Of a stretch of DNA of 64,000 nucleotides, positions 3,001 through 42,103 are shown one piece after another (position 1 is the stretch's first letter; each line of letters opens with the position of its first letter). The position numbers and the translations under genes are program-made. The stretch is from assembly GCF_006345805.1 (NCBI RefSeq), contig NC_043017.1, positions 14,260,001 to 14,324,000 on the forward strand, given 5' to 3'. Under the pieces are notes generated by a model, which saw only the letters and a list, made by a program, of their open reading frames with translations, ran no database searches and was not told the origin of the DNA. Source of the DNA: Octopus sinensis. Its lineage: Eukaryota.

Positions 3001-3142
3001 CACTAATATTAAATGTACACACAGCTACACATATGTATTCCAATATATATGTACAAACATACATACTTTATAGGGATGAATATCTTACAGGCTGCAAGTT
3101 TGTTTCATTGAACAACCATATAAATTGTGAAATGAGTTTGTA

Positions 3143-4835: not shown

Positions 4836-6455
4836 ATATATATATACTACACACACACACACACTCACACATATATATATATATAAACTAATATAAATGT
4901 ACAAACATGCAAATACTGATATACACTTATTTATTTAAATATATGCATGTATGATTTTTCTTTGAGTTTTATGTAGGTTCTCCTTGAGAGAGTTCAAGCT
5001 TGTATCTAACAAAGCTAGAAGACTTTTTGAGTTACGAGAGTTCCTAGTGTTTATAAATATGTTGAACTGGTTGAACTGTCAATGCACACATCCAAGTGTG
5101 TGTATCTATTCACATTTTTGGAATAGATTGGATTTGGGGAATCTGCATCAGTTTCTAATGTGTGTGTGTGTGGTTGTATGTGTGCAAATAAAACAAACTA
5201 ATACATTTATGTATCAAAATTGCTGATATTAATAAAAAAGATAATAGACATTATAAGAACCAATTTTGTGAGAGGAAAGTGCAGTAGGCTTGCTGATAGG
5301 ACTGAACCACAAATCTCTAGCATTCTGGGTCACTGATGGGATTTCAACTACAAATCTACAAGTTACTGCATGAGTTACAGATTAGGTGTCCAAATGTTTC
5401 GCAATACAACAATGTGCAAGTTTTTACTATATTTCTGGAAAATATTAGTCTGTGAGTTGGGGAGTGTTTGGAAACATTAGTGTTTAGGATGGAGACTTTG
5501 AAAGTTCTATGGCTAGGCATGAAGACTTTGGAAAGTCCTGTCATCATGGATGGGATTTGAACTCAGAACACAAAGGATAATATTAAAGAACATTCTTATT
5601 CAAATGTCACTGACAATAATCTATGTGAAATTCTGAAATTCCTTGAAGAAATTGTGTCACATCCATACCTGCTGAAAGCGAAACTGTTGTCCATTTAATC
5701 TAAGGCAAGGAGAATGAACTGGAATCTTATGATACTTGGTGCAGGGTTCAAACTCCTGAGTCTCGATCTAATTAAGGAACACAAGAAGTACAAACGACAT
5801 CCATACAATATAGTTAGAAAGTTTGCCTCCAATAAGAAACAGAAAAAGTAATCATAGTCTTGGTGTTAACAATGTCAGAGTTACAAATTTAGAGAATTAT
5901 TAAGATTATGAATAAAATCATAATAATGTTGAATTTTCATAACTATTAACAGGAAAAATAGATATCACAAGACCTGAAATGACAAAGGGGACAAAAGTAG
6001 GCAATTAGACTGACCCTTATACATGACTTGTAATTATAGTATCTACTGCAGTTGTCTAAAAGGAAAAGGTGACCTTGGTGAGAAATGAACATAAGACCTA
6101 TGGGTAGGCAAGTGAATACCACAAGGCATTTCATCCATCACTCCACTGCCAATCCACCAACAAGATTAATATATTCATTTTTCACTTAGGCACAAAGGCA
6201 CAAGAGGGTTGAAGAAGGCTAGGTTGACCCCAGTATATAACTGATAGTCTATTTCATCAAGCTTGGATGGATAAAGAACAAAATTAACTTGACGATTAAC
6301 TTAGAACCTAAATAATTACAGCAAAACATTCTGTTCATCATTTTAGTAATTCTGCCAATTTACTAATAAGATTAATTAAGTAATTCAAAAGTAATTCTTT
6401 GAAAACATGTTACATAAATAAATATCTTATTCTTCATATTGCTTTGTGTGTGTGT

Positions 6456-6502
<47 letters not shown>

Positions 6503-9500
6503 TATATTTATACAATGTATATCATGAATATATTATAAGTATCATATAAATGTTAAATTACATGATATAAAACTAAAGTTTGAACAGTGGAATTAGAGTT
6601 TCATTTGAATGAAATTTTTTCTAAATATTTCAATTGAAGGAAAAAATGATCAAATGTGAAAACTTTGAGAATGATTATAGAGATCAAATTGTTATAAATT
6701 GTAAAGTAATTACTAGCCTAGTTTATAAAATGAGACAAATTTTAATTAATTAATTTATTAACGAAGAGAAAAATCATTATGTTAATGATTAATTTTGATG
6801 AAGAAAGAAAAGATTGCAGTAGGAAGGAAGTCCGATTTTTGGCAGTTTGGTGTTAACAGAGGACATGTTTCAATTTTATTAAATCTCATCAGTCTACTCT
6901 AACAGATACTGAAAAATACTCGAGGACACCAGCTACACAGAAAACATTAGTATAGTACATGCTGAAATACTTAATAGACTGAGCCAAAGATTATTAAGTA
7001 ATTACAAAGCTTAATTCTAAAAATGTTCTTTGTTCTTTAATTCTTCATATCTAATAAATTGCAAGAAATTTTCTCACCAATTTATTGGTTATATGTTAAA
7101 CACATTGTCTTGTAGATTAATAAATAAAAAATCTTTATTCTGAGGTAGCTTTTTAAATCAATAACATTTGAACTATGGGCAAAATCCCCTTTTTAAATTC
7201 TAAAATTATTTGGAAAATGTTTAAAGGTTATGTCTTGAATATTTTAAAATGATTCATTATGGAAAACAGCGTGGATTCTAACTATTCATAGAATTAACAA
7301 AATAGTAATTATGATAGAAATAATAAAATGTGCATTCATTATGTACAAAATTAATTAATCAAATTAATATGGGAAAAGACTGACATTACACTATATAGGA
7401 ATAAAATAGCAACAGGTTTATTATGAATTGAAATTTACACGAATCTAAGTTCATTATAAACAAAATATATTTCAACAGAAAATAATGTAATTAAAAAAAT
7501 GGATATTAATAAAGCTGAAATTAGAAGAGATAATTAGTTGGTATAAAAATAAATTTTAAAATCATTTCTAATTTATTTTCATTTGCATAAATTTTAGATG
7601 AAGATGGGCAAAATATTTTTCACTCTAATTCTATTATTTATTTTTGTCATTTTACATAATTTAAATGAGTTCTTGGATTGAATCCTTTTTTAATTTTATA
7701 ATTAATCTAAGATCTAAATAAGTGATACATAAAATGACAGTGTAAATATGTCTTAATCAATTTTAATTGAACAAATTATCAAGGAATATTATTTTAAAAA
7801 TTATTATTACTATTATTATTACTCCAATGGTTGAAAACTTTACAAACTAAATATTTAGAGTGAGAGTTTTAATGTATTTTTTGGTAAAGTGGAATAATAA
7901 AATTATATAATTTAAATTTAAAACAAATGCAATTTTCTAACATACCTAAAACAATTAAACACCCCACCAGTTATTTATTTTGTACATTGAATTGGTAAAA
8001 GAATTACAGGTTGTTAATTAGAGGTTTCCAATGGACTAATCATTCGCTCACTGTATTTTTAGAGGCAGTAGTAAATGAGAATGTACATAAGTTGGTGTAG
8101 AATAAATATTGGAAAGGACTTCATCCAAACAGCTTTTGCCAATGCTTACAGCAATGACTGACACACAATTTGTGCCTAGTTGCCATCAACCAAATTTCAC
8201 ACACAAGCTTTGGTCGACCTGAGGCCACTGTAAAGTGGAATTGAACTCAGATGTATGTAATTGTGAACTTCTTAGCCACTTACTCATGTCTGTATGTATT
8301 ACAATAATGTCTTTTAGAATAATATAATACAGAAACTGTGGACTCAGTTTTAATAAAAGTTGACTCATATTAAGACTTTTTGTTAGTCGACTCAAGATTT
8401 TCCCTTTACCCAACCGCTATGTGAATTCACTGGAGTAAGTGTTAACCATAGTTAATACAAAGGACATTAAACTTTTTCAAATGATCTCTTTAATTCTGTT
8501 TTCCTTTAGGAAGTACAGTACTTTCTTCCAGAATGCCCTCCTTCTCCTAAGACTGCTTCAGATTTCATGATACAAAACCTCCTGTATCAAAATGCTCCAT
8601 GCATAAATTAAAACTTTCTATCACAATTTCTTCTGTAACCCATTTATGTTCCAAACATTAGAATTATCATGAAGCTTGAGTGTTACCAATTGTTTGATGT
8701 ATAATGTTAGGAATATGCTTTTTGCCAATGATAATGTGACAATGGTACAAGAGTTATAATTCTACTTTGTTCAAATTTCATAGTACCTATACAAACTAAC
8801 AAAATGAATAATGATTTTAAAAAAATATAATATCTATTATATTAAAATAAAATTCATTCAAACAAATTTCTCATTTGTATGTTTGCAATAAATATAAGTC
8901 ATCAATAACAACAAAACTGTTTAATTATCAGTTAATCACAGATATAATATTATCCTATCTAACCCAGTGGCAAAAATATATCCTAAACATTATCTACTGT
9001 AGTTATATTTAGTAACCATCGTAGAAAATCCAATAAAATCAGAATTATCTCCATTGGAAGATAAAAGCAGGATTAGAGATGGGGAGGGAATGCTGCCAAT
9101 TAAGTTGTTTATTTTCTTAAACCCATTCAAATTCTAGATTATTTTTTAACATAACAGAAACACCTAGAGATAGTATTTCAATAGAAATATGGTCAGTCAA
9201 GTGTTAATTAAACATTAAGCCCAGAAATAATCGTGCAGTGAGGAAACACCATAGTTAATAATTATTATCATTTGAAATGAACTGGTAAGTATGGGAGACA
9301 ATCCAAACATGTTTCAGTGTTATTGGAACTCCTTAGCAAAACAAACTTTGCCAGGCATGTCAAAGTAGTGATGACAGAATCACTAAGTCAATATAAACTT
9401 AGAAAGTAGAAAATAGTCAATGAACAAACTATGTTTAGATGCTGACTCCATGTCAAAAATAAAAGTTAATGTTTAGTGTATTATCTACTGAAATAAGTAC

Positions 9501-9871
9501 AATAGTTATAAAAAATTAATTCAATAAAGAATATTACATCACAATTCCAAATAAGGCATAATTTCTTTTCTCCCTTATATCAAAACAGATTACTTTATAT
9601 TTGCCATTTTAAATTCTCTGAAGCAAAAGAATTTTAAACAACAAATAAAATATTCTAAGTGTAAATATATATAAGCATTTTGATATTTATTGCATTATTT
9701 AAATTCTTACTTTTTTTTATCATTTATTAAGTTATTTAAATTATCAAAAATATTTTAAATTATTCTTAAAACACAAAAAGTTATATTTCTTAATTTAAAT
9801 AAAATTGCTCAGTGTAAAGAAAAAAATGGCTCAAAAGGTGTAATTAGAAATTCAGATGACCACGAGCTTAC

Positions 9872-9886
9872 CTCCACTATACTGGG
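9872..9886 (-). CDS. Candidate 15-nt microexon (PSIVE) of Cav2 C-tail
   Basis: ctacttactgttgtttttcattttcaatggcaag|CCCAGTATAGTGGAG|gtaagc: branch-like CTTAC, pyrimidine tract, strong donor, frame-preserving. Could be chance. Confidence 0.3.
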
Positions 9887-11299
9887 CTTGCCATTGAAAA
9901 TGAAAAACAACAGTAAGTAGTAGTAGTAATAACAGGTTCTAATTTTAGGTAGAGGACCAACATTTGTGGAGTTAGAGGTTACTCAAATCGATTCTAGAAT
10001 TTGATTTGTACTTTCCTTTATTCTTGAATGGATGAAAGGCAAAGCTGACACTGACAGAATTTGAACTCAAAATGAGCCGAAAGAAATATAATAAGGCATT
10101 TCTGTTAATCTGCAAGGATAATTAATTTTCAATTATCATTGCATAATAATAATAATAATAATAATAAAGTCAAAATTTCTAATACTTATTCTTAGACATG
10201 AAATCTAAAGATGAGAAAATATTTCTCAGTGATTAAATTGATCTACAATATATTTAGAATGTAAAGTAGACAAATCCTATGTGAAATTAAGGGAAAATGC
10301 CAAATTAAAATTAAGAAGCAATTCTTTTTAAGATATGAAATTCTTAATATTACAAAATTGAAGCTTGGAGTTCAAAACTAGGGATGACTGCAGTTTAACT
10401 CATAGAATAATTTTTGCTATGACTGACGATCTAAATTGTTTGGAACATGTTCCATTTGGCTTTGTATTTAAGAAAGAAATGTTTCATTAAAGGCTTTATA
10501 TAATTTGGTGAAGAAATAAAGTGAGGAATTTATAATTTATTTCAGAAACACAAGAAATCTCAATGGGAAGAATGTAAAAGCAGAAAGTGTCGCAGAAAAT
10601 TCTTTGAAAAGAAAAGTGCATTTAGAATCAAATCTTAAGTGTGTGTTTAGCTAAAAATGCCAGAATTAAATTTTTGTGTGAAGAGTTTAGCATGCTAAAT
10701 CCTTATGTTTTACTGCATTATCATGCTTTTAATGCATAAAAAGTTTGTTAAAAAATGTGTAAAGGCCAATGTAAAATTTGTGTTGTAAGGCAAACTTCAG
10801 TGACGCTTATGAGACATGTTATTGGACATAAAGAATCTGTGGCTTATGAACAATTTGAAATATCCCTAGAAGACATAAGAAAGAAGAAATCAGATCATTT
10901 TAGAATCAACAGCAGTTTTGATGTATATATGAGAGACAATCAGGAATGGATAATTAAAAAGCGAGGATTAAAAAATCAATGGAAATTTGTGTCAAGTGCT
11001 TTCAGAGTCATGCTTCTTAATTTTCTGCAAAGATGGAATTGAGAGGCATGTGTGCCTACAAACAAGTAGTTAAACATGTGCACATTTATATATTTCTCTC
11101 TATATGCATCTATGTGTGAGTGTGTGTACATATACATACACACACACACACTCACATACACTCACACACACACACATTCAGATATATGGATGTGATTTGA
11201 TTTTATTACAAAAATATTTTAGACTATAGACATGTAGATGAATGCGTGTATATATTTATGGGTGTGTACAAATGTCAAAGTGTGTGTATGCATATATAT

Positions 11300-11368
<69 letters not shown>

Positions 11369-12429
11369 ACCCAGCCAGCTACACATGCATGTAAATATAT
11401 GTGGAGTAGATGTGAAGTGTTGAATAAGTGATGTGACTTTATAAATAGAGAAATATTTTGTAAGCAATATTATTAAAAGTGATCAGAATCAAATGTAGAA
11501 GTGGCGGACCAAAATAGTTGATGTGCTGAGAAAATGTTCGATGTGCACAGAAGCTCAAAGGGAATGGACTTCAAACATTCAAAAAGTAATCAAGAGTTCT
11601 CATAATGAGCATTAATTAATTAGAATATTGACTGAGAAAAAAAAAAAAAATATATATATATATATTATATATATATATATATACACACTTGCTTACTTGA
11701 ATGACAAGTTGAGTTTTCTTACCATGTGGATGAAGCAACATGCATAGTTGATCCGTGCACAACATAAGAAAGGGTTGTAAACACAGAGAAAATAGATTAC
11801 AAGTTTAATGAAAACATGTTGGGTTTTTAATTATCAGTTTCGTTTAGAACCAGATTTGAAATGTTAACAAGTTGATAGCTTTAACTAAACTTTACGAAAA
11901 ACAATATGGTTAGAACATATTTCTTGTTTTGGTCTAGCTAGAAGAGATAAGTAAATGATAAAAACTATAGAAAAATAATTCCACCACAACATGCAGAATA
12001 AAAGAAGAAAAAATAAGATAAAATTCCTCATTGATTGTAAGAGCTACAGCAAAAGGGACAAAAACTATATTTTGGAAACTAGCACAAATCACTGCAATAC
12101 TTGCAAAATGGTTATAAAAAAAAAAAACAAACCTACAATGAATGAGAAATAAAGGACAAGGACTACAAAGACTTTCGACTGGTTTTTATGATAAAATGGA
12201 CTACGTTCTCAATGCACTTACACTGGTGAGAAAAATTGGTTGAAGAAAAAGTGTTTTCAACTACTTGGGTCACAAGCAATTTAAAATGAGGTAGGTGCAT
12301 AAATATGGATAACTTGTGACAGCATAAATTCGGATAATAGAGTTGAAGAGGATGGAGGCAGACTGGTGTAACTTAAATTCCAGATGCAATTTAGGTGTGC
12401 CAGAGTAATTGGAGTGTATTCAGTCATAC

Positions 12430-12573
12430 CTGATTATAGTCCTCATCATAATCTTTATAATCCTCTTGATACTCCTGATAATCTTTATAATCCTCGTGAT
12501 ACTCTTCGTCATCGTGATATTCTTTATAATCATCGTCATCACGATATTCCTTAATATCATCCTCCCAGAACAA
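12430..12573 (-). CDS. Cav2: Probable cassette exon of Cav2 C-tail encoding an acidic Tyr-rich repeat (LFWEDDIKEYRDDDDYKEYHDDEEYHEDYKDYQEYQEDYKDYDEDYNQ)
   Basis: 144 nt, no stop, phase 0-0 matching the upstream IQ exon. Acceptor cttttctgatttcaag, donor CAG|gtatga. Synonymous GAT/GAC and GAA/GAG alternation. No transcript evidence available here. Confidence 0.65.
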
Positions 12574-12787
12574 CTTGAAATCAGAAAAGTTGAACAAATC
12601 AGATACATTCAAAATTTCAACAAGAAACGTAAAGCTCTTCGACATCACAGCTGTAGATTACTCTCCAAAGGCCATGGAATGTGTGTGCATGTATATATAA
12701 TATATATATTCACATATACACATAAACAAAAAAATGTACAAGGTACTTAAAAAATACACATATAACTTAATAATCTAAAGATTGGTC

Positions 12788-12832
12788 TTATATATATATA
12801 TACATGGATATACATATTTATATGTATACATA

Positions 12833-12876
<44 letters not shown>

Positions 12877-12991
12877 GGATATACATATTTATATGTATAC
12901 ACACACATATATATATATATATAATATATATATATATGTATATATATGGATATACATATTATATGTATACACACACATATATATATATTAT

Positions 12992-13042
<51 letters not shown>

Positions 13043-13289
13043 TTATATGTATATATATATATATATATGTATATATATGGATATACATATTTATATGTAT
13101 ACATATATATATATATATATATATACATACATGCATGCATACACACATATATATATGTATATATATATATTATATATATATATATAAATAATATAATATA
13201 TATACACCTACAGATATGTGTATATATATATATATATATTTATACACATACAGATATGCATATATAGATATATATATACACACTGACAT

Positions 13290-13332
<43 letters not shown>

Positions 13333-13500
13333 TATATACATATATACGTACACACACACACACATATATATATATATATCAATAACCATGTGCATATAAC
13401 GATATACATGCATATATACACACACGCATATTCATTTACATAATTACATACAGTGATATATATAATTATATTCATGTATATGGTCATACATATATACATA
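12788..13500. repeat. Compound (TA)n/(CA)n microsatellite with higher-order ~70-nt unit
   Basis: The motif ggatatacatatttatatgtatac recurs 4 times. Confidence 0.9.
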
Positions 13501-13959
13501 CAGTCACACTAAAATAGATATAGAATCATTTCCAGTCAAAATATGAAAATAGGAATAAAATATCTAAGAACTTCATGTGTCATGAATTAATACCTAGAAA
13601 CTAATTAATAGCTAATTAGTACAAACAAATTGTTCCACTCAACTAATATTTGAACCTGAAACTACTCTGCTCACAGAATATAAAAGATGTAAAGTTTTGT
13701 AATGATACATCAAAAGTAGGTAAATCTATTATATTAGAAATTATTTAATCTAAATCATTATAATGACCAATTTTAGCGCTAACTTGTGATTAAAATGCAC
13801 AGTGAACTGAATTAAAACAATTCTTTCAGTGTTACATAATAATACTGTAAAATGGCCAAGAAAGAGCAGGAATTTTATAATGAATATATTTAACTAGTCT
13901 AATGATAGGATTAAAAGATAAACAAATAAAATAAATAGAGCCAACTCTAAACCCCAACA

Positions 13960-14520
13960 AGAAAAAATGCCACCATTAGGCCATCTGGTTTATATCCCCA
14001 TTTAGGATCTTCCTTGGATTAGCAGATAAGTATTTTCCTAAAAAAAATACATACAGGAAAAATTTCAATAAGATACTTTGAGGGTCTCTTTTACCTGTGG
14101 ACCTAGCTTAAAGAAAATTTTAGCAAATAAGCCCAAATCTAGCATAGAGATAAACTGTTCGTTCAGATGTAACACCACAAGCCCACTAAATGGTCAGTAT
14201 AACACAGAAACCATCACATGTGAAGCAGAAACAGCCTCAAAGAATCCTAGCAGAGTGATAAATGTACAAAAATACACAGGTGCCATGGAAGCCTCCTTCA
14301 AGTCCAGGCTGCACAGCCACAAATGTTTGTGTCATATTCAAGAGAATGAAAATATAGGCAGAAAATACTGCACAATATAACACCGGGTGAAGACTGTACA
14401 GGCACAGACCTTCCATGAGCAGCAGTAGGATGTGCAAACTGTTAACAGAAAAAAAAATCATATTAAAGAACACTCTCCACCCAAGGGCTGACTGAGCTTT
14501 AAAAGTGAAGTTATTTCTTA
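13960..14520 (+). mobile_element. Degenerate Penelope-like GIY-YIG fragment
   Basis: ORF 14078..14380 (SPLNGQYNTETITCEAE...KYTGAMEASFKSRLHSH) resembles the CPLxGxC..VY.A..YIG.TE..FK.R...H pattern. Confidence 0.5.
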
Positions 14521-16049
14521 CTGCCCTCATGAACTCAAGTTCATATTAACCAGCTGGTCAGGCAGACCCAAAGTATAAAAGCTGGCTTTTCCCTTGCCAT
14601 AAATGAGAAGTTAACATTCTCACTGCCTCACACAACACATATACACACTAATACACATTAGTGCATATGCCTGTCCACATCTTTAGAAAAAACAAAAAAA
14701 AACTCCATCACTCTCCCATCCAATTCTGCACCTTTCCCTGCACATGTCTCTCTACCTCCACATCACCTTGACCCCTCTTCACTCTTTTATCAAATATCAC
14801 ATAAAAACAGAGTGGACTTTTGTCAGATGAATGGTGAAATTCAGGTCATTGGATCAACAGGACAAATTCATAACACATAAATCTGACAGCCTTCAGAGAC
14901 AACCCCATTTGTTTGGTTCTATTAACCTGTTCTTTTGGCCGCATTCTTTTATCCATCATTGTTGTTCTGGATTTCTACAACAAGTCTGAGACCCATAAAA
15001 CAGATGACATTTTCAGGCCACCAAAAGTAGAGAGACCAAGCCATACTTTTCCATTCAACCACGTATGATGGTTGTTTATTTACCTCTCCAATTCTAGAAG
15101 GTTATTGACATGAATCCAATCAGACACGTTAATTAGTTGTTATGAGACTATAATATTGTAATAATAAAAAAATAATTATACATATATATATATATATGTA
15201 TATATTTATACTTAAAATGTACACATACAAGTAGATATACATATAAACAATACAATATATTCACATATATAACAAGATATTGATGTCGATATATATCTAA
15301 ATACATACGTTATATGTATATATTTATCTGTCTGTCTATCTATCTAAACATAAATATACATATGTATAGAGAAAGACATATGTTTATATATGTGTATATG
15401 AACACAGACCAAGATTGAGAAGAAAAGTGTTCCCTTCAGACTAACACTGAAGCCATATCTGTTCTGAGCCAGAACAAAGCACCTTCAATGGTTTGGGATT
15501 ATGATCACACTCATGAACGTAACATTTATACTTACATATACTTATATGTGTGTGTGTACACATTGACACAGACATGAATATGTACATATACACACATTTA
15601 TGTATAAACACACACACACATCCCATGTATATTTAGTAGGTGTATTGTCCTTCAAATGGAACCAACATTTTTACTAATTCCTGGTTTCCAGGTAATGATT
15701 TAAAGCCACTACTTCGTGTTAGATCCTAAAATGAAATGTAAAGGAATATAGGAAGTTGTGGAATTGGTTCATTATTTGAAGTTCCAGAAAAGGTGAAACT
15801 TAAAGGTGTAATCTATTGGAGACTAATCAAGCAGTTAAATTCCCACACACACACACATACACACAAACACAAAAGGTCTTTCCTGTATACTTTTCCCAAT
15901 ATGCCAATCCTCTACAAAATTAAGGGCTAGCAGCTTAGTTCACTCATTTAATAATCAATTATATTAAACATAAAAAAACAGCAATAAAAAACCAATTTGG
16001 GTTCCCAACCATGCATCAGAGATCATTTACACAAGAAAAAGGAAGAAAA

Positions 16050-17130
16050 AAACCCCGTAAAAGTCAATGTTATACTGTAGACTAGAATATATTTATAGAT
16101 ATAAATATTTATAGAATATGCTCCGGCATGGCCATAAACTGTGATGCTTAAAACAAACACAAGAACTACAAAAACTGGAAATAATGAAGTGGCTGATAGT
16201 AGTCCAGCAAACTGATGTTTGAAGTGAGAAGGGAATTCTATGGCTGTTGAATAAAGGAAAGGATTGCAACATGGGGCATAAGGAGAGACATCTAAGTCAG
16301 CCTGGAAGGGATTAATACACATCTAGCTAGTTCTGGTGAGCAGAAGCAGTTGTAGATGAGAATATATTTTGTTTAGCTGAGCAACCAGAGGTCATGACTA
16401 TTCTTCAAGGCATCTGAGTTTGGGAAAGAAGCTATCTTTACACAAAATGCTTACAGATGCTTACAATGGGGTGGAGCACATCAAATGAAGCCAAGTGCCA
16501 AGCAGTTCTGTTAAACTGGTTGAGAGATAAAGCTTAGACTTCTGCAAGATCAGTACCCAACCTAATGAAATAATGTCCAGAGGGTTAACACCAATGTTGG
16601 GTTTCTTGTGAAATGTAGCCACTGATCTCAATTGTCTGTGCATGGGTTTTATGGAAGATCTGTTTATGTGGACGCAGTTGCAATGACAGAATATGGGTAA
16701 GTGTTGATTCCACATATGCTCTGTAGGAGTCACAGGCAAGTGAAATTGAAGAAAAATGAGAGTGCATTTATGCAACCCTTCAAGAAATCAAATAGCCCCC
16801 ATTGTACAGCCACATTCAATCTAAATGTTATCAAGCATTTATCACTAAACATCTGCAAGAGGATAAATGCATTAGACTTTAATGAATTCAGCTTCCACAA
16901 AGCTGTAGTGTATGATAAGGAGGCACTACTAGGTTGCTGATGTCAAGATGAGACAAACACTTGCAACTGCACTCCCCAAACCATAAAAACATTAAGAAGA
17001 GAAATGTTATATGGAACAACCCACCGTACAATAATGCTGTAGAAACTAGTATTACAACTCATTTCATGAACAGCCTTAAATGCTGTAAATTATTTAACAA
17101 AATCAACAGCAGCACCAGTAACACTGTTAA
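16050..17130 (+). mobile_element. Degenerate Penelope-like RT-thumb/linker fragment (second family)
   Basis: PFKKSNSPHCTATFNLNVIKHLSLNICKRI and KRNVIWNNPPYNNAVETSI resemble the PYRKPN..SNHP and RNIIWFNPPY motifs of Penelope-like elements; heavily disrupted. Confidence 0.55.
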
Positions 17131-17599
17131 CGTAAATATAGTGCAGACAAACATAGAATGAAAGGAGCTGAGATGCACTCTCAAAATATAGAGTTTAGCC
17201 TCATAAAAGAGGGATGTTTAGAGAAAATATTGTATGTTGTGCTAATGTCTTCAGCAATAACCCTTTTCATCATTAGTGTCAGGAAAACAGCAAATTTGGA
17301 AATCAAGAAACAAAGCCCTCAGTATCTCAGAGGCAGTATTAGAAGAGATACAGGTATTTAAGAAGGGATCAAAGTGTTATGGTGTCTGTATTCTATAGAA
17401 ACTCCATTCCATTTGCTGTCACATCTTAATCTTAAATTAAAAAAAACACACCAGCCAATACTGACTTGTTGAAACATGCTCAAATTCTATGTTGGGGATT
17501 TCAAGGAAGTTTCACCAGATGCATAGTGTCTCTTGTCATGCAAGAGCCTGGGCTATCACCAGATGTGAAGTAATTTAAAAAGAGGAGAAAATCATAAAG

Positions 17600-17759
17600 A
17601 AATAAGTGGTAAGTAGCTTGCTAACCAACCACATGGTTCCGGGTTCAATCTCACTGCGTGGCATCTTGGGCAAGTGTCTTCTGCTATAGCCCCGGGCTGA
17701 CCAATGCCTTGTGAGTGGATTTGCTAGACGGAAACTGAAAGAAACCTGTCGTATATATG

Positions 17760-17790
<31 letters not shown>

Positions 17791-18000
17791 ATGTTTGTGT
17801 GTCTGTGTCCCCCTAGCATTGCTTGACAACCGATGCTGGTGTGTTTATGCCCCCATCACTTAGCGGTTCGGCAAAAGAGACCGATAGAATAAGTACTGGG
17901 CTTACAAAGAATAAGTCCCGGGGTCGATTTGCTCGACTAAAGGTGGTGCTCCAGCATGGCCACAGTCAATTGACTGAAACAAGTAAAAGAGTAAGAGTAA
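17600..18000 (+). mobile_element. tRNA-derived SINE with CORE-like central domain
   Basis: B-box-like gggttcaatc, cttgggcaagtgtctt core, internal (TA)/(TG) tract and conserved tail. Decayed relatives at about 8120, 9935, 23750, 28620, 31110, 41985, 44220, 57475 and 59830. Confidence 0.7.
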
Positions 18001-18544
18001 AAGTTAAAATAATAAAACAAATATGAATGGTAATTAGTTGGAGTTAAATAGCATTATAAGGAAAATATTTAAAATAACAAATTTAAATGTTTACTACTAA
18101 TTATATTATTGAAACCCGCATGTGTACTTCATTGTTTAAGTGGATATGTGTGTATAATATTACAGAATATTCATTAGTGTATATAAATAGAAGTCAACTT
18201 TCTATAACTTATGCCTTAAGTTCATTCAACTTATCAGGAATCTAAACTCAGAAATCCAATAGAAAATACAAGTGAATATTAGATAATATCATAGACTTGT
18301 AAGAACAATCAGTCAGGAGATTTCAAAGACAGACTTTTATATGACAGAGGAATAATTTGTGTAGTAAGAAATAAAATATTCATTTGCAACAAGAAATAAC
18401 CAAAGTTTGAACTAAAATAGAAACACACTATAACTTGTGTGTGTATAAAATATAATGTACCTAAAATGTGTATTTAATATTTCATTTATGAAATTCTACT
18501 TACTTTGTGTCACAAGTACATCTCATGTATGGTTGTATGTATGG

Positions 18545-18581
<37 letters not shown>

Positions 18582-19169
18582 GATGGATGTATGCATACAT
18601 GCATATATTTATCATCATTTAATGTCCATTTGCCATGCTGTCATGGGTTGAGCAATTTGACAAGATCCAGCAAGCCACAGGGCTGCATTAAGCTCACATA
18701 CTTACACATATATGCATATACACCCGCACTCTCTCTCATCTGTGGTTATCATTTGTGCAAGTGTGCATGTATGTATAATATGAATATTAAATTTCAATAT
18801 ATACATTAAATGTTTCTGTGTTGATGGTTATCTGATGTGTTAACCACTGAACATGGAATGTAAATTAACAATTAGTGTTACCCTCATTGGTAAGAGACCA
18901 GTGTTCATGCAGATTCAGAACACGAGCCATCTGCAATGAGTTATCATTTCACCCATCATATCACAACATATCCACTTATTCCTCTCTCTTTCTCTCTGTC
19001 TGTCTTTGTGTACAATATTATTAAATGTATCCCTTCCTCTTCCTCTTCCTACACACACATTCTAATTCATAAAATTGCATACACTTTCAAATTATCAGTA
19101 AAAAAATACAGATTTGGTTAAATTTTGAACATCATTGAATTCCCATGTTTTTTCTGTTAATGACCACAA

Positions 19170-20049
<880 letters not shown>

Positions 20050-20226
20050 CATCCTGCAGGGTGACCAATAAACACCCTCCTCACCAAGCAAGCTTGGTGG
20101 GGTTGCCGATTTAGTCGCCGGCGACCCGACCATGCAACAGGTTGTGCTGGGTTACATGTTACCAGTAGGACTCGAAAGTGACCTTCGCACAATGGCCATA
20201 CTCGATAACGAAGGGGCAGCCATCAT
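20050..20226. other. GC/CpG-rich structured 177-bp insert within TA repeats (probable retroelement 5'-end fragment)
   Basis: Multiple perfect hairpins or palindromes and a sharp composition shift; family not verified. Confidence 0.4.
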
Positions 20227-22619
20227 ATATATATATATATACATACATACACAGTCTTAGAGAAGTATATATCAATAAGTATCACTATAGATATACTTAA
20301 TCTATAAAAATGTTACAATACATATTTAAGAAAATAAAGTGTGCAAATTCTTGGAAATAGCAATTAAAAAAGATTTTGTTATTTTAAAAATTTATTCCAT
20401 ACATGATTGTGTGCTTGAAACGAAATTCAATTAAACAAAATCCAAGAGGATTTCTGAATGTCAGTCACTTGGCTCAATGTCAAGAGATTTTTTTCGCTTT
20501 CACAGAAACCGAAGGTTTTGATGTCTAGCATCTTGGATTTTATCACCATTACTGCTCCTGCAGACCCTTACAAGTTATTTAGTTTTATTACAGATTTTAC
20601 AGTTACAAACAGTTAACACTGATTCTAGGCATACTGAAGATATATCTAAAATATTAATGTTTAAGGAAGAAATGGAATCATTCTATTCTTGAAACTATCA
20701 AAATACTGAGTGAGTCTTTTAAAATTTAAATATTGAAAACTTTTTGAACATAACACTAAAGATATGATATACAATATTTTAATTAAGATAGATAGCCATA
20801 TTTGAAACATTTTATTATAAAAACTTACATGAATGAATCAGTATGTATGTATGGAGTGTGTGTATACACATAGTATGTATATGTATGCACTCATATACAT
20901 ACACACACAAACATATACAAGAAATAGATAAAGAGACAGGTATGTAGATACATACAAGTATATATATGAACACACATATGCACACAAAATTGTTATAATT
21001 AGATGAAAGCTATCCTTTATATTCATATGAAACATAATTGCAAAGAAACATTGAAGTGAATACAAAATAAGATACACAAAGACAATCTTTTTGGTAAGTT
21101 GTTATTACCAAACAAAAAAGCATGATTGATTATTGGTGTGAAATTTTAAATCAAAATAGACCAAGGGAAAAAAATCAACATTTACACATCAAAATGTGAA
21201 GCTCAACTTAAACAAGCAATGAAAGTGTTGTTTTAATTGCACATTTACTGTATTAAGAAGAAAGAAAGAAAGAAAAATATTATTTAAGTGGCTAGAATTA
21301 AATAAAATATTAAAAAATTGCTGTGTTGCTCTCTATCTAACATGGTTATTTGAAGTGGCTTCAGTGACAGATTTCAACAAGAAAAGCAATGTGGAAATAA
21401 TTAAAAACAAATTAAAAATAGAACATTTTTAGTTATTATTCTAATAACATAAACAACTGAATGTGGTGTTTACTGTGAAGTGGTGTGCTGCAGCCTTGAG
21501 CAATGGCAGTCAACTGGTGCCAAGCAGAGCTTGAGCAATTTACAGGCAAACAAATTTCACAGACCATACTGATACGAAAGCAGAGAAAGACTTATGTTTA
21601 ACCTATAAACAGTGAGAACTTGGGTGAAAACATGCACTTATAATTAAAGAACAAAATAGGTAAAAATAATATAAATAATATAAAGATGGAAAAATGTAAG
21701 AGAGAGCATACCAGATGGAATGAATTTCAAATAGTTTAGCACAATCTATTATTGTTCAGTGTCAAATAGATGTGGGGGAAATTAACAGTAAATTAAGTAT
21801 TTAAATCATAGTTTTAAGTAATGTATATTTGTAGAGAAGTGTAAATTACCATTGTTAATGTCATTTTAATTTGCTAAATCAAAAAATTATTTTCACACAA
21901 AATCTTGATTCTCTCAAAGTCTAGAATCTCATAAGTTCGAATCAGGCAGAGTTTGCTGATAAGGTCTAATTAGAGCAAAACATGCCTGAAGTTATCCTAT
22001 ATCACTGAGGATCAAATTCACTTCTCTGCTACATAATTCTATTTCATTTTTAGTCAATTTATATTTCATATTCTTCTCCATTGCCTTTCTTAACAAGAAC
22101 TGTCATTGCTGCTAAAGACTTTGCTCCTCATTCCAGGAGCAATTTTGTTTGGTTAAAAATTCTTTTTGGTTCACTACATTAAATATGTTAATGTTGTAAA
22201 TAAGTGAATTTATCAGAAAAAGCAGCCTGTCAGGTATACACACGCATGCACACACACACATACAGATAATACTGCTAGCCATGTAACAAAGGTATTTCTA
22301 GAATATGAGACTAGCAAAACAGTTCTTTGAATCCTGATTTGAATATATTCTACATGAAGGCAATATTCAGAAATACAAAAATATATTAAAATAATAAAAG
22401 TTTGTTACTTCCTGAAATTACTTCAGAATCTGTGCAAAGCCCTTAATCAAAATACGTATCGACAGACCCACATTGCACCCTAATGCACCCCTACTTCTCT
22501 GACTTTTCGCGTCTGTTCCAGTTGATAGGCTCACAATATTATATTTACACAAACTATAAGTGTTTCTCTAACAAACAACTTGTTATGTCCCAAATTCTTG
22601 AAATTAGACTATTTACAGG

Positions 22620-22930
22620 GGCCAAATGTATGCCATTGATATTGTGACTCCTGTTACACCATCAAGTCTTTCACGACTACCCAGTGAACTCAATATAAAA
22701 GGAACTACTCCCAACCAAATTCAATATTTTAGTCCCTTGACTTTGTCCATCTCTTTGCATGATGGATTGTTCTGGAGGAAGGGACTGTTTGGAGAACAGA
22801 GAGGTTCAGAGAAAGTGACTGTGTCTATGGTCTTCACAGGCCCTTCTGAGACCAATGGCTTCAGAACATTTACAGTCCCTCTTGAATACTTGCAATTTAA
22901 TATCTGCAGAAAAGGATGACAAAGGGATGA
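22620..22930 (-). mobile_element. Highly degenerate LINE (RTE-like) endonuclease-region relic
   Basis: Weak resemblance to APE N-terminal segments (SETR..GQL.E...YTFFWSG); no intact frame. Confidence 0.3.
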
Positions 22931-23316
22931 TATTTTTGGGGAAGAAGGACTGGTCATAATGGTTACAGTGAAACACAATGTGGGCATTTCACACACACAC
23001 AAACACAATATATATATAATTAAAATTAATCAAAGGATATACTAAGTATGTCTACCTGCTGGAAATAACAGTGACATCTCTTATTTAAATCGCAATTTAA
23101 ATAAGAGTTTTGACTGTTATTTCCAACATACTTAGTTTGTTCTTTGATTAATTTTAATCCTTCGGCTATTTAATGCTTTTTGGGGGCCTGTAATCACCTA
23201 TATTATTGATTCTGCTATTGTCATTTTTAAATTGTTACACTAAATAATAACAATGGTATCTTCGCAAATTATTTTTCATGAATAATTTTTTCTCGTCAAT
23301 TATTTGCTCCGTATTG

Positions 23317-23385
<69 letters not shown>

Positions 23386-25423
23386 TCCCTCGTTAACCTC
23401 TAGGAAAGGAAACAGCTTCAATACAGAATTGGTGTGATGTGTAGCTAAAGAATTATTAGCAATATCATCATCATAATCTTTATTATAATTAATTAATGAC
23501 ATTATCGTAGCAATAAAATCATTAATTATTTCCTAATCTCAAACCAGTTAACATTTTCAAGACTCAGTGTCTTCATACCCACATCCAACACCCTGAACTT
23601 CTTAAGTTGATATATATTATTGATAATACCCACAGATTATAACCAAATCAATTATTGATCACTGATTATCATTAATTTACCAACTGAATAAACTGGCAGA
23701 AAACCACTCAAAGGCCAGTGTTTTTGCTAGTAGTAGTGATAATAACCCTCCCTGCTATAAGTACAAGGATCAAATTTCAGTAGAGAAAATTTGACAATTT
23801 ACATCAACCCCATTGCTCAACTGGTACTTTATTTTATCAACTCCAAAAAGATGGAAAGCAACAGTGGCCTCGGCAGGACCTGAACTCGAAACATTAAGCT
23901 GGAAAAACTACCCAACAGAAGCTAACACACAGGCTAACTTACTAACAGAGTAGCAAGCAGAATTATAATCTGATATTTAGGATAAAATCTTGGTAAGACA
24001 AGTGATAAAATCGTACACAAGACTTCTCATGGCTTAAGCCCATGACCAAAATGGAGATTTATGGACACATTCCACCTAGCTCTAAAATTGTTGCTCAACT
24101 TAGAATCAGCTTTGCTGACTACTAATATTGTACTGAACACCACGATACACCAGATATTATTGGCAGAGACACACATCACAAAACTGAGGATCCAGCAATG
24201 CTAGTGGAGGACAAATATTCCTAGTGTGATGAGATGTATCTTGATTGCAGAATAAAATTGTTTATTTTAATAATTGATTTATAATTATCATTTTTATCAT
24301 TATTAGATCATTTGTATATTAATTTAAAAAAATCTAGTATATCAGGGTTGTCTCCCCTGCATTTATTAGCAAGAGTTGATCATTAGGTTAATTAGTCATT
24401 TTCCTCACCATGGATGTAATTTTAATCAATTACAATATCAGGGCTCATGACATTAAATACAGATCTAACAATTTGGCTTTCCTGCAAAACATGTCCCCAG
24501 GTAGCATTTCGATTTTGTTCTAATTATCTTCACATATTTTTACTCTAATTTGTAGATAATGTGTTTTATATCAATTAAAAGGTGTCACTCATAGTTGAAA
24601 CCTTAATACAGTAAAACTGAGTCAGTGATCAGGCTACAAATGTATGATGAAACTTTTAAACACTTCATAGTAGTACTATTTCGAAATTTAACAGATTTTC
24701 TTTTCGCATTTATAATTGGCTAATTTAACTGAAATGGCATCTGGCTGAGTTGATGTCTGTTGTTAATCTAGGCAGTGCTAGGTCTATTCTTTAACTTTAG
24801 AACTGGTATGCTCTGTATCGGAACACTTTGAAGACAAGAACATTTGAAGATGTGCAATATCAGTGAAAGTAAAGTTTTGCACACTTTCATGCTAAGAAGT
24901 ACTGACCTCTTCTTTTTTCTCCTGCAAAAAAGTACAACACTTTGACAGGTGTGTGTCAACTAACAAAGCAAAAGGGCCACAAATGAGATAATGGGGCAAT
25001 TAACAAGAACAATGGTATGGGAACAGCTAAAGTCTTAAGAGTTTTGCTTTTAAAGAAATGTACAGAACAATATATGGAACAGAAATGTAGAAACTCAAAA
25101 CAGAGATGTTTGCATGTGCTTGCACGTACGTACGTGTGTAAAAGAAATTCACTATGTTGAATATAGCATAAATATCCAGAACAAAAATGTGTTTTAATTT
25201 TCAAAATCAACAGTTTGTATAATTCTGAAATAAAGCAAATAAAACTATAAACGATTCTCTCATTAGCTTCACAAGGAATTCATCAAAACTGTCCTAAAAG
25301 ACTTGTTATATTTTATCAGGACATAATTTATCACTTTTGAAATTTTTTTAAAAAAAAGAAACTCTTTAATAACAAAATAATAAAAAATTCTGGGTGTAGT
25401 TTTTTTTTTTTTTAATTACTTAC

Positions 25424-25533
25424 CATTTTTAAACTATTATTCTGGTTTTGACTAGCTTTGTAAGCTCGCCAGTTTTCAGCTACTAAAAGTCCAGTGTAGA
25501 TTTTTCCAACTGTCAATTTCCGATCGTTTAATT
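25424..25533 (-). CDS. Cav2: Cav2 exon: IQ-like calmodulin-binding region (E-LNDRKLTVGKIYTGLLVAENWRAYKASQNQNNSLKM)
   Basis: 110 nt, acceptor ttttttttcag, donor ATG|gtaagt, phase 1-0. LTVGKIY motif. Confidence 0.95.
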
Positions 25534-26399
25534 CTGAAAAAAAACCCAATATTTTCCAGTGATTACAGGGAGAAAAAAAAAAACATCTGACTGAAAATGT
25601 GAGATAAAAAGTAGTTTCAGTGACTGTTTCACCTTAGATCAGACCTCGTCAAGCACATCTATAATTAAAACTCTTCTGACCATAGCCATCTAGCACTATT
25701 TTAAATTTAAAGGGAATGTGAGTGCATGTATGGAGGTGGGGGATGAAGGAGATTAGGCTGCTATTTCTAGTAGGGTAAGCATCTTCTAGGTTAAAAACAG
25801 ATCAAAAGAGTTGTAGTAAACTGTAAAATATGTCATAACATTTTATAGTGATCTAAGAAAAATAATGGCAAGATTATGTTACACTGATGAGATAGAAAAA
25901 GACTGAAACAAGTATGGAGTTATCACTGACAAACTCTCAGCCCACATCATATTTTTAATTAATTAAAATTTCTAAGCTGACTTCCCTTTCTTGATACTAT
26001 AATAATTGAGATCATGAATGTTTCAATCAGGTACAAGAGTAATTTTATTTAACTGTAGCAATTAGTTGAAAATAAAAACTTTATAGTAATTAATGAGGAT
26101 ATATTATAAACATAATTAACTTCCCTATATATAGTTGTCCCTTGTTTTATATGTGAGTCATCATGCAAATTGAAATTGTGTAAATCAACGGTGTTAAAAG
26201 AAAATTTTAATAATTTTAAATTATTAAATTTAAAATTTAAATAATTATTTATTGAAATTAGGACAATAAATTATTGGTGCCAGCAGCATTATCTCATCTT
26301 TGAGTCCTTCCTTTACGATGAAACTGTTGATGCCTTTGTAGAGCAATTCTTGCATAAGTGTCAAAGGCAATGTGAGTGGAGGATGAGATTGTTGAGCCG

Positions 26400-27348: not shown

Positions 27349-27453
27349 CATGGTTTGGAGGAACAAGAAGATCTACAATTTTTTTCCCATGTACAGGCCA
27401 CACCCGTTTGATGACTTCTCGCATTTCTTCATCTTTCCTATCCATTTCATCAG
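27349..27453 (-). CDS. Cav2: Cav2 exon: pre-IQ (A-DEMDRKDEEMREVIKRVWPVHGKKIVDLLVPPNH + G)
   Basis: 105 nt, acceptor tcttttacag, donor gtaagt, phase 1-1. DLLVPP motif. Confidence 0.95.
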
Positions 27454-41642: not shown

Positions 41643-41759
41643 TTTAAAGGATTGTAAGAACGTCCATAATAGTAATCTGATGGTATAACCTTGACGTAGT
41701 AGCTTGATAAGTCGTGCCGCTCTAAATAACCTGAAACTTCCTGTTCGAAAGGAAGACGC
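41643..41759 (-). CDS. Cav2: Cav2 exon: IVS4 voltage sensor and S4-S5 linker ([39 protein letters not shown])
   Basis: 117 nt, acceptor ctctttcag, donor gtaagt. [19 protein letters not shown] is the Cav2-type IVS4 sequence. Confidence 0.97.
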
Positions 41760-42103
41760 CTGAAAGAGAAAATGTTGTGAATTAAGTTTGGAACCAAAAG
41801 AACACACAGAGAATTCATATTTCTAAATAATATTTCAAAACTGTTAATCAAAAAATAAAAGTCATTCTTTATTGGTAAAGGGATTTTAACACTGGAATAT
41901 CAAAAGATTAGGTAAAGTATAAGCTGTTGCCTTGTCTTCCTCCTTTATACAATCCTATATTTAAAAATTGTAATAGTTTTCTAAGCTGGCACCCCATTGG
42001 TTACGATGACGAGGGTTCCAGTTGATCCAATCAATGGAACTGCCTGCTCATGGAATTAACATGCAAGTGACCGAGGGCTCCAAAAACACCCATACCCCTT
42101 AAG

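What the first reader, a model, noticed from the sequence alone, without database searches (positions are those of the whole stretch)
12430..12573. Isolated 144-nt exon encoding a hyper-acidic, tyrosine-periodic repeat right after the IQ domain of Cav2
Seen: 48 codons with 14 Asp, 9 Glu and 10 Tyr but only 4 Lys, 1 Arg and 2 His. It is built from DYK(E/D)Y units; Tyr falls at 16, 19, 25, 29, 32, 35, 39, 42, 46 (mostly 3/4 spacing, one helical face). Splice sites and phase fit insertion directly after ...NNSLKM, 12.85 kb upstream in the transcript. Synonymous variation and triplet-only repeat units argue for coding constraint rather than a (GAT)n microsatellite. Established: the region after IQ governs calmodulin-dependent modulation, and acidic Tyr contexts are preferred Src/Syk-type sites. 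Inference: a switchable lineage-specific module acting as a multisite phospho-Tyr/SH2 scaffold, a low-affinity Ca2+ buffer, or a competitor near the calmodulin site. I do not recall an equivalent in vertebrate Cav2, but cannot confirm novelty among molluscs.
Basis: partly seen in the sequence, partly recalled or inferred. Interest (0 to 1): 0.75.

Follow-up and report, generated by a model that had tools for sequence, protein, structure and literature searches.

The report
Known acidic exon in octopus Cav2
This is a real, very acidic, tyrosine-rich coding exon just behind the calmodulin-binding IQ domain of an octopus presynaptic calcium channel, but it is already in public gene models and listed in a 2018 paper, so only its function and unusually strict conservation remain open.

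Summary
Window 12573..12430 (minus strand) is a 144-nt, phase 0/0 exon with AG and GT splice sites. It encodes LFWEDDIKEYRDDDDYKEYHDDEEYHEDYKDYQEYQEDYKDYDEDYNQ (14 D, 9 E, 10 Y, net charge -18) and lies 12,850 nt downstream of the Cav2 IQ exon.

It is not new. Three UniProt Cav2 alpha-1 models (A0A0L8G525, A0A0L8G5M3, A0A0L8G6E5) contain ...NNSLKM|LFWEDD...DYNQ|RPPSFFQRI.... Dunn et al. [quoted passage not shown]

New here:
- In a related genome (Logan contigs from SRR11869385 and related runs) the exon is 144/144 nt identical. A 400-nt block around it has 1 substitution.
- Introns beside the IQ exon, from the same run, differ at 11.9% of aligned sites.
- No homologue turned up outside these sequences. 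Another mollusc locus has no such ORF at this position.

All ten Tyr follow D or E. The "one helical face" claim is weak overall.

Function is untested. My best guess is that it tunes the calmodulin/IQ region electrostatically. The phosphotyrosine-scaffold and Ca2+-buffer ideas remain speculation. I found no junction reads, and alternative use in octopus rests on the literature.

The parts
12430..12573 (-). 144-nt phase 0/0 coding exon: LFWEDDIKEYRDDDDYKEYHDDEEYHEDYKDYQEYQEDYKDYDEDYNQ
   Evidence: Sequence and translation. 48/48 residues identical to positions 1262-1309 of P0007 = UniRef100_A0A0L8G525. 144/144 nt identical in Logan contigs L001-L004.
12574..12610 (-). Splice acceptor region: AG at 12575-12574, a pyrimidine-rich run, and two CTGAT branch-point-like motifs
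   Evidence: Read directly (gtatCTGATttgttcaacttttCTGATttcaAG|). Identical in the related genome.
12424..12429 (-). Splice donor CAG|GTATGA (GT at 12429-12428)
   Evidence: Identical in the related genome.
12315..12714 (-). 400-nt block (exon plus about 141 nt upstream and 115 nt downstream) with a single substitution against a related genome
   Evidence: 1 substitution and 0 gaps in 400 aligned nt. This compares with 11.9% substitutions in introns beside the IQ exon and 5.7% in the rest of the same contig. The binomial P is 6e-21 against the first rate and 2e-9 against the second.
12448..12561 (-). Internal in-frame tandem duplications (30-nt unit x 1.9 copies at 96%; 27-nt unit x 2.3 copies at 80%) that build the (D/E)-Y repeat
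   Evidence: Tandem Repeats Finder. All periods are multiples of 3.
12574..25423 (-). 12,850-nt intron between the IQ exon and the acidic exon
   Evidence: Coordinates. The junction KM|LFWEDD is present in P0007-P0009.
25424..25533 (-). IQ exon, (E)LNDRKLTVGKIYTGLLVAENWRAYKASQNQNNSLKM; starts in phase 1 and ends in phase 0
   Evidence: The Pfam Ca_chan_IQ match (8e-29) ends 10 residues before the acidic exon.
27349..27453 (-). Pre-IQ exon (A)DEMDRKDEEMREVIKRVWPVHGKKIVDLLVPPNH
27878..27983 (-). Pre-IQ exon [35 protein letters not shown]

Best explanation
It is a genuine, single-copy coding exon of the octopus Cav2 (presynaptic, high-voltage-activated) calcium-channel alpha-1 gene. It is spliced between the IQ exon (...NNSLKM) and the next C-terminal exon (RPPSFFQRIIGVMR..., which lies outside the window).

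This is the position where Aplysia Cav2 carries a run of optional exons. There the mini-exons DPVRLPK and NHNEK sit before a large optional segment that begins RPSLFRR. The octopus exon is therefore the octopod-lineage occupant of a mollusc-wide splicing hotspot just behind the calmodulin-binding IQ domain.

It was built by in-frame duplication of 27-30-nt units. It encodes a 48-residue polyanion (net -18, no Ser or Thr) in which every Tyr follows Asp or Glu.

Shown here: exon anatomy, its place in the protein, prior annotation, and very strong nucleotide-level constraint on the exon and about 130 nt of intron on each side.

Inferred (about 0.25 each, not tested):
- The flank conservation reflects regulated inclusion.
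- The peptide acts as a charged, partly helical spacer. It would alter how calmodulin (itself acidic) and the conserved basic segment RPPSFFQRIIGVMR engage the IQ region, and so tune Ca2+-dependent feedback. Tyrosine phosphorylation is a possible second layer.
For: Anatomy: AG/GT sites, 144 nt, phase 0 at both ends, matching the phase-0 end of the IQ exon.

Protein context: P0007, P0008 and P0009 (UniRef100 A0A0L8G525, A0A0L8G5M3, A0A0L8G6E5) read ...ASQNQNNSLKMLFWEDD...DEDYNQRPPSFFQRIIGVMRTPSARSSQSIDSEHSD... and end in DDDWC. All window exons tested match them at 92-100%.

Literature:
- Dunn et al. [quoted passage not shown]
- Their supplement shows Aplysia ...NNFKM followed by optional DPVRLPK and/or NHNEK, then RPSLFRR..., or skipping of all of these.
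- Dunn et al. 2023 report four consecutive alternative exons after the IQ domain, used differently in sensory neurons and whole nervous system.

Constraint: 0/144 exon and 1/400 block substitutions against a genome whose introns beside the IQ exon differ at 11.9% of aligned sites plus many indels. The constitutive IQ exon itself has 3/110 changes.

Regularity: all 10 Tyr are preceded by D/E (P = 1.7e-4 under shuffling).

Lineage restriction: no other homologue among 1.84 billion representative proteins. There is none between the IQ and KPSLFRRLMG exons of another mollusc.
Against: - No spliced read or transcript contig covering either junction was recovered. The related-genome contigs are colinear with the genome, that is unspliced.
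- The two word-indexed protein searches returned no octopus transcripts at all.
- All three UniProt isoforms retrieved include the exon, and none shows the skip junction. Alternative rather than constitutive use in octopus therefore rests on the 2018 table and the Aplysia analogy.
- Those gene models are imperfect. They omit the domain IV S4, pore and EF-hand exons that are present in the window.
- The species behind the comparison contigs is unknown, and the databases held only one relative.
- The functional inference has no direct support. The exon has no Pfam or PDB match, and the Aplysia exons at this site had no detected effect.
Confidence: 0.8

Rival explanations
1. The exon is constitutive in octopus, not a switchable cassette. 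It would be a fixed, lineage-specific expansion of the linker after the IQ domain.
For: All three isoform models in the retrieved cluster contain it, and none has the NNSLKM|RPP skip junction. The splice sites look competent.
Against: Dunn et al. 2018 list it under alternative splice sites and name a single accession as carrying the insert. The homologous position in Aplysia is alternatively spliced. Near-perfect conservation of about 130 nt of intron on each side is typical of regulated exons; this last point is established knowledge, not tested here.
Confidence: 0.2
2. The peptide works mainly as a multisite tyrosine-phosphorylation and SH2-docking scaffold.
For: Ten Tyr all have an acidic residue at -1. 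Src-dependent inhibition through an EF-hand tyrosine is established for Aplysia Cav2, so tyrosine kinases do act on this C-terminus in molluscs.
Against: From general knowledge, Src-family kinases prefer an aliphatic residue at -1 and a hydrophobic one at +3. Here -1 is always D/E and +1 is R/K/H/Q/D/N. There are no phosphorylation data. The nucleotide-level conservation, which includes synonymous sites and introns, is not explained by this function.
Confidence: 0.2
3. The peptide is a low-affinity, high-capacity Ca2+ binding or sensing patch next to the channel's inner mouth.
For: 23 of the 48 residues are carboxylates and net charge is -18. From general knowledge, acidic tails such as those of calsequestrin and alpha-synuclein bind Ca2+ weakly.
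Against: There is no EF-hand or other Ca2+-binding motif (no Pfam hit). The strict (D/E)-Y regularity is not needed for buffering. One copy per channel is negligible as a buffer.
Confidence: 0.1
4. It is not translated sequence at all. On this reading it is an ORF-like repeat inside an intron that gene predictors picked up, conserved for a non-coding reason such as an enhancer, an RNA structure for A-to-I editing, or an antisense gene.
For: - Three of the six frames are open.
- A 113-codon antisense ORF spans it.
- Conservation extends well into the flanks.
- The related-genome contigs are unspliced.
- No junction-spanning transcript was found here.
Against: - The phase fits at both ends, with canonical splice sites.
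- The next exon in the models starts with the conserved RP(S/P)xF motif that follows this site in Aplysia.
- The paper cites transcriptome data.
- The conserved block folds no better than shuffled sequence (z = +0.88).
- The antisense ORF is only the I/L/F-rich complement of GAT/TAT/GAA codons.
Confidence: 0.07

Closest known systems
Aplysia californica Cav2 alpha-1 C-terminal splice site 5: the run of optional exons (numbered 45-48) that includes mini-exons DPVRLPK and NHNEK ahead of the large optional segment RPSLFRR... (Dunn et al. 2018, 2023)
   Same: Same gene family. Same insertion point, immediately after the IQ exon's ...N(S/F)(L)KM and before the exon starting RP(S/P)(L/S)F. The intron setting is also similar, with introns of several kb. 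The 2018 paper itself equates the octopus insert with this site.
   Different: There is no sequence similarity: 5-7 neutral or basic residues in Aplysia against 48 hyper-acidic Tyr-rich residues here. The Aplysia authors call their exons non-conserved. Those exons showed no measured phenotype, whereas the octopus exon is under very strong constraint.
Octopus bimaculoides Cav2 gene models KOF72120.1 / UniProt A0A0L8G525, A0A0L8G5M3, A0A0L8G6E5
   Same: The exon peptide is identical (48/48), as are the neighbouring exons. This is the same feature, already deposited.
   Different: Nothing differs for the exon itself. The models omit the domain IV S4, pore and EF-hand exons visible in the window, and they carry no functional annotation of the insert.
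Alternatively spliced C-terminal modulators of Cav1.3/Cav1.4 (ICDI/CTM) and the PCRD-DCRD charge pair of Cav1.2
   Same: From general knowledge, these are C-terminal segments whose presence depends on splicing or proteolysis. They act on the calmodulin/IQ apparatus, partly through charge. That is the kind of mechanism proposed here.
   Different: They lie in the distal C-terminus of a different channel subfamily and form folded helices that bind the EF/IQ region. No homology was detected (no Pfam or PDB hit). No binding was tested.
Acidic, Tyr-bearing disordered tails such as the alpha-synuclein C-terminus or the band 3 N-terminus
   Same: From general knowledge, these have D/E-flanked tyrosines, bind Ca2+ weakly and are tyrosine-kinase substrates. 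Alpha-synuclein is also presynaptic.
   Different: These are unrelated proteins with no repeat regularity comparable to ten (D/E)-Y in 48 residues. This is a resemblance only, not tested.

Membership tests
Cav2 alpha-1 subunit, proximal C-terminus | The Ca_chan_IQ domain lies immediately upstream in the same reading frame and transcript | tested here: met
   Pfam PF08763, E = 8e-29, ends 10 residues before the exon in the spliced product. The IQ exon is at 25533..25424.
Cav2 alpha-1 subunit, proximal C-terminus | Domain IV voltage-sensor and pore exons lie upstream on the same strand, and the full-length product ends in the Cav2 PDZ ligand D(D)WC | tested here: met
   Ion_trans hits for the ORFs at 41628-41807 and 38277-38630 on the minus strand. 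P0007 ends ...DSDEDDDWC.
Post-IQ alternative cassette exon (mollusc Cav2 splice site 5) | Inserted between the ...KM end of the IQ exon and the RP(S/P)xF exon | tested here: met
   P0007 reads NNSLKM|LFWEDD...DYNQ|RPPSFFQRI. Aplysia reads NNFKM|(DPVRLPK)(NHNEK)|RPSLFRR.
Post-IQ alternative cassette exon (mollusc Cav2 splice site 5) | Canonical splice sites and a length divisible by 3, so that skipping preserves the frame | tested here: met
   AG|...|GT, 144 nt, phase 0 at both ends.
Post-IQ alternative cassette exon (mollusc Cav2 splice site 5) | Transcripts both with and without the exon occur in the same species | not testable with these tools
   The only support is the literature table. All three retrieved models include the exon. 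No octopus transcripts were in the searchable protein sets.
Post-IQ alternative cassette exon (mollusc Cav2 splice site 5) | Sequence homology to the Aplysia or Crassostrea inserts at this site | tested here: not met
   By inspection, DPVRLPK, NHNEK and VEDKEE share nothing with the 48-residue peptide. Another mollusc locus has no acidic-Tyr ORF in the corresponding intron. The equivalence is positional, not by sequence.
Non-coding microsatellite or minisatellite | Uniform unit, length and sequence unstable between related genomes, no frame preservation | tested here: not met
   The units are degenerate and all periods are multiples of 3. The exon shows 0/144 differences against a genome with about 6-12% intronic divergence. 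The (TA)n tracts bounding the contig diverge or break the assembly.
Calmodulin-competing C-terminal modulators (ICDI/CTM type) | Binds the EF/IQ module and changes Ca2+-dependent inactivation | not testable with these tools
   No homology was detected. This needs electrophysiology and binding assays.
Acidophilic tyrosine-kinase multisite substrates | Tyr embedded in D/E-rich context | tested here: met
   10 of 10 Tyr have D/E at -1 (P = 1.7e-4 under shuffling).
Acidophilic tyrosine-kinase multisite substrates | Demonstrated phosphorylation of the tyrosines | not testable with these tools
   No phosphoproteomic resource is available here.

The most novel reading that the evidence does not exclude
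The acidic (D/E)-Y cassette is an octopod-specific regulatory module under exceptionally strict nucleotide-level constraint, covering the exon and its intronic flanks. Its regulated inclusion would switch calmodulin-dependent feedback, or the tyrosine-kinase or active-zone coupling, of the presynaptic Cav2 channel. That function would have no counterpart in other animals' Cav2 channels.
Probability: 0.2. Interest if true: 0.55.

Novelty: already known. Interest (0 to 1): 0.3.

Why it matters
Cav2 channels trigger transmitter release, and the segment behind the IQ domain is where calmodulin feedback is set. Octopods appear to have installed and then frozen a 48-residue polyanionic tyrosine repeat at a splice site that other molluscs fill with short, unrelated and apparently dispensable mini-exons.

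The exon's existence is not news. Two things do make it a cheap, well-defined target for anyone expressing cephalopod channels:
- The degree of constraint: no change in 144 nt and one in 400 nt, where neighbouring introns differ by 6-12%.
- The perfect (D/E)-Y regularity.

They also suggest the exon's inclusion is regulated. If it proved inert, like the Aplysia exons, the conservation would itself need another explanation.

Tried and rejected
1. Junction evidence. A word-indexed protein search with pre-IQ + IQ + acidic exon joined, and another with the skip form IQ + RPPSFF..., returned only genomic ORF fragments and two transcripts from other invertebrates. There were no octopus transcripts, so inclusion and skipping could not be measured.
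2. The Logan contigs carrying the exon (L001-L004) are colinear with the genome, not spliced.
3. A literature search for the run accessions SRR1186938x/9x, to name the comparison species, gave no hits.
4. I looked for the next exon (RPPSFF/RPSLF) in window 1-12429 by regular expression and tblastn. It is not there and must lie beyond the window.
5. I tested whether RNA structure explains the flank conservation, for example as an editing duplex. The 400-nt block folds no better than shuffles (z = +0.88), so I rejected this as far as local structure goes. An inverted-repeat scan failed on a parameter error and was not repeated.
6. I counted known splicing-regulator motifs (Rbfox, Nova, PTB, MBNL, CELF) in the conserved flanks. 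Nothing stood out.
7. Pfam and PDB sequence searches with the peptide gave no hits.
8. The helical-face statistic for all ten Tyr was not significant.
9. The microsatellite explanation was rejected.

Full report
**1. The observation**

On the minus strand, 12573..12430 reads ...ttttctgatttcaAG|TTG TTC TGG GAG ... GAC TAT AAT CAG|GTatgact. It translates without stops to LFWEDDIKEYRDDDDYKEYHDDEEYHEDYKDYQEYQEDYKDYDEDYNQ.
- The composition is exactly as reported: 14 Asp, 9 Glu, 10 Tyr, 4 Lys, 1 Arg, 2 His. There is no Ser or Thr, and net charge is -18.
- Tyr is at 10, 16, 19, 25, 29, 32, 35, 39, 42 and 46.
- Tandem Repeats Finder sees only periods divisible by three. The best arrays are a 30-nt unit (1.9 copies, 96%) and a 27-nt unit (2.3 copies, 80%). 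The exon therefore grew by in-frame duplications of 9-10-codon units, roughly KEYRDDDDY / KEYHDDEEY / HEDYKDYQEY / QEDYKDYDEDY.
- Synonymous variants exist for Asp, Glu, Lys and Gln, but all Tyr codons are TAT.
- Three of the six frames are open over the exon, so openness is not evidence by itself.
- The composition is unique locally. Among 13,724 stop-free 48-residue windows in six frames of the 64 kb, only windows overlapping this exon reach 15 or more D/E. The DNA is single-copy in the window.

**2. The gene around it**

The minus strand carries the 3' part of a Cav2 alpha-1 gene.
- An exon covering the start of domain IV (FYVNP...LGFGLK) lies at about 63593-63757.
- The S4 exon ([15 protein letters not shown]) is at 41628-41807, and the pore/S6 exon is at 38277-38630.
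- An EF-hand exon is at 28289-28215.
- Two pre-IQ exons are at 27983..27878 and 27453..27349.
- The IQ exon is 25533..25424 and ends ...NNSLKM|gtaagt in phase 0.

In the spliced product the Pfam Ca_chan_IQ match (E = 8e-29) ends 10 residues before the acidic exon.

**3. It is already annotated and published**

A full HMMER scan of 1.84 billion representative proteins found two hits. One was a 73-residue genomic ORF (P0001). The other was P0007, a 1857-residue protein.
- P0007 is UniRef100_A0A0L8G525. It clusters with A0A0L8G5M3 and A0A0L8G6E5, all named [quoted passage not shown].
- All three read ...WRAYKASQNQNNSLKM LFWEDD...DEDYNQ RPPSFFQRIIGVMRTPSARSSQSIDSEHSD... and end DDDWC.
- The exon matches the window at 48/48 residues, and the neighbouring exons match at 92-100%.
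- From my own knowledge, the A0A0L8 accession series is Octopus bimaculoides. The window is therefore that species or a very close relative.

Dunn et al. 2018 (Sci Rep 8:3263, PMC5818475) list the insert in Table 1. [quoted passage not shown]
- Their supplement shows the Aplysia arrangement. After WKAYKASQNASNNFKM come optional DPVRLPK and/or NHNEK, then RPSLFRRLMGGMR..., or a jump over all of these to PGNDFSGG.
- The octopus exon therefore sits at the positional equivalent of the Aplysia mini-exons.
- Dunn et al. 2023 (PMC10657410) describe four consecutive alternatively used exons after the IQ domain. They are used differently in sensory neurons and whole nervous system, are described as non-conserved, and had no detected effect on depression or its reversal.

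**4. What I could add: constraint**

P0001 comes from four Logan contigs (L001-L004; runs SRR11869385, -390, -391, -394). They are colinear with window 12814..11347 and hence unspliced.
- The exon is identical at 144/144 nt in all four contigs.
- The block 12315-12714 has one substitution and no gaps in 400 nt.
- A contig from the same run (L005) covers the IQ exon. Its flanking introns differ from the window at 11.9% of aligned sites and carry many indels. The IQ exon itself has 3 changes in 110 nt.
- The remainder of the L001 contig differs at 5.7%.
- Against these two rates, at most 1 change in 400 nt has P = 6e-21 and 2e-9.

The acidic exon and about 130 nt of intron on each side are thus more conserved than a constitutive, functionally central exon of the same gene. 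From established knowledge, such exon-plus-flank conservation is characteristic of regulated alternative exons. I did not find a specific cause:
- the block does not fold better than shuffled sequence (z = +0.88);
- known splicing-factor motifs are not enriched;
- the exon is purine-rich (64% against 47% background), which fits exonic enhancer content but also follows from its codons.

The species of the comparison contigs is unknown.

**5. Lineage restriction**

No other protein in the representative library resembles the peptide. In a 29.7-kb contig of another mollusc (L010) the IQ exon is followed after about 2.5 kb by KPSLFRRLMGVMR..., with no acidic-Tyr ORF between them. The searchable sets held no squid, cuttlefish or Nautilus sequence for this region. 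"Octopod-specific" is therefore likely but not demonstrated.

**6.

- All ten Tyr are preceded by Asp or Glu (P = 1.7e-4 under shuffling). The +1 residue is R, K, H, Q, D or N.
- The "one helical face" claim is weak for the whole exon. The resultant is 0.435 at 100 degrees per residue (P = 0.09), and the best period is 3.25-3.3 residues.
- By my own arithmetic, the last seven Tyr (spacing 4, 3, 3, 4, 3, 4) do stay within about 140 degrees of arc.
- AlphaFold2 without an alignment predicts three helices at low confidence (mean pLDDT 65). This does not distinguish a helix from a disordered polyanion.
- There is no Pfam or PDB match.

The phosphotyrosine-scaffold, Ca2+-buffer and calmodulin-competitor ideas all remain untested.

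My preferred reading is inference, at about 0.25. A -18 segment placed 10 residues after the calmodulin-binding helix, and directly before the conserved basic segment RPPSFFQRIIGVMR, would change the electrostatics and spacing of the calmodulin/IQ apparatus. That would tune Ca2+-dependent feedback, in the general manner of spliced C-terminal modulators in Cav1 channels. Tyrosine phosphorylation would be an additional possibility, given that Src acts on the EF-hand tyrosine of Aplysia Cav2.

**7. What is not established**

- I found no junction-spanning transcript.
- All three retrieved isoforms include the exon, and none shows the skip junction. Alternative use in octopus therefore rests on the 2018 table and the Aplysia analogy.
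- The gene models are imperfect in domain IV.
- The next exon lies outside the window.

**8. Verdict**

- The identification as a Cav2 exon behind the IQ domain is confirmed.
- Novelty is not: the exon is already known.
- Function is open.
- The cross-species constraint and the strict (D/E)-Y grammar are new details that make the exon a reasonable small experimental target.
- Interest is modest.

Noticed in passing
window 63593-63757 (-): This exon at the start of domain IV (FYVNPYPEPNPQAKIFLNVQKYINIAFTILFTIECVLKLLGFGLK) is one of a mutually exclusive pair that Dunn et al. 2018 list for Octopus (FYVNP...LGFGLK versus YNGSS...MGFGIR). The UniProt models use the other member, which is not in the window (36% match only).
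   Followed up: partly
window 41628-41807, 38277-38630, 28215-28289 (-): The domain IV S4, pore/S6 and EF-hand exons are clearly present in the window (Ion_trans hits; [43 protein letters not shown]). They are absent from all three UniProt Cav2 models, which jump from ...MGFGIR to KLIRMNMPV. The public models are incomplete here.
   Followed up: partly
window 33137-36386 (+): A retroelement sits inside a Cav2 intron. It has consecutive ORFs with RVT_1 (E = 7.5e-22) and zf-RVT domains, and long (ATT/ATA)-type simple repeats follow at about 36400-38300.
   Followed up: partly
window 42847-44166 (-) and 46083-47600 (+): Two closely similar reverse-transcriptase fragments (RVT_1, E = 4e-21 and 1e-30; both contain FVDMEKAFDRV...WWSMRKLGIDEWLVRAVRAMYR) lie in inverted orientation about 2 kb apart within an intron.
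   Followed up: partly
window 12789-13379; also 19135-19920 and 58215-58918: There are very long degenerate (TA)n-type microsatellites. The first (about 590 nt, 300 copies) begins only 216 nt upstream of the acidic exon and is where the related-genome contigs end.
   Followed up: no
L005 (SRR11869385) versus window 23337-26181; L001 versus window 11347-12814: Divergence between the same two genomes differs about two-fold between the two intronic regions: 11.9% near the IQ exon against 5.7% in the outer parts of the acidic-exon contig. Constraint may therefore extend beyond the 400-nt core block.
   Followed up: partly
window 12409-12750 (+): A 113-codon antisense ORF runs across the exon and is almost entirely Ile/Leu/Phe/Val. 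It is the expected complement of GAT/TAT/GAA codons, and there is no evidence that it is a gene.
   Followed up: no
L006-L009 (SRR11236195 and related runs; ENA ERZ27269834): Contigs from what look like environmental or mixed assemblies carry a compact-intron invertebrate Cav channel gene with GPHH and IQ exons. The organism was not identified.
   Followed up: no
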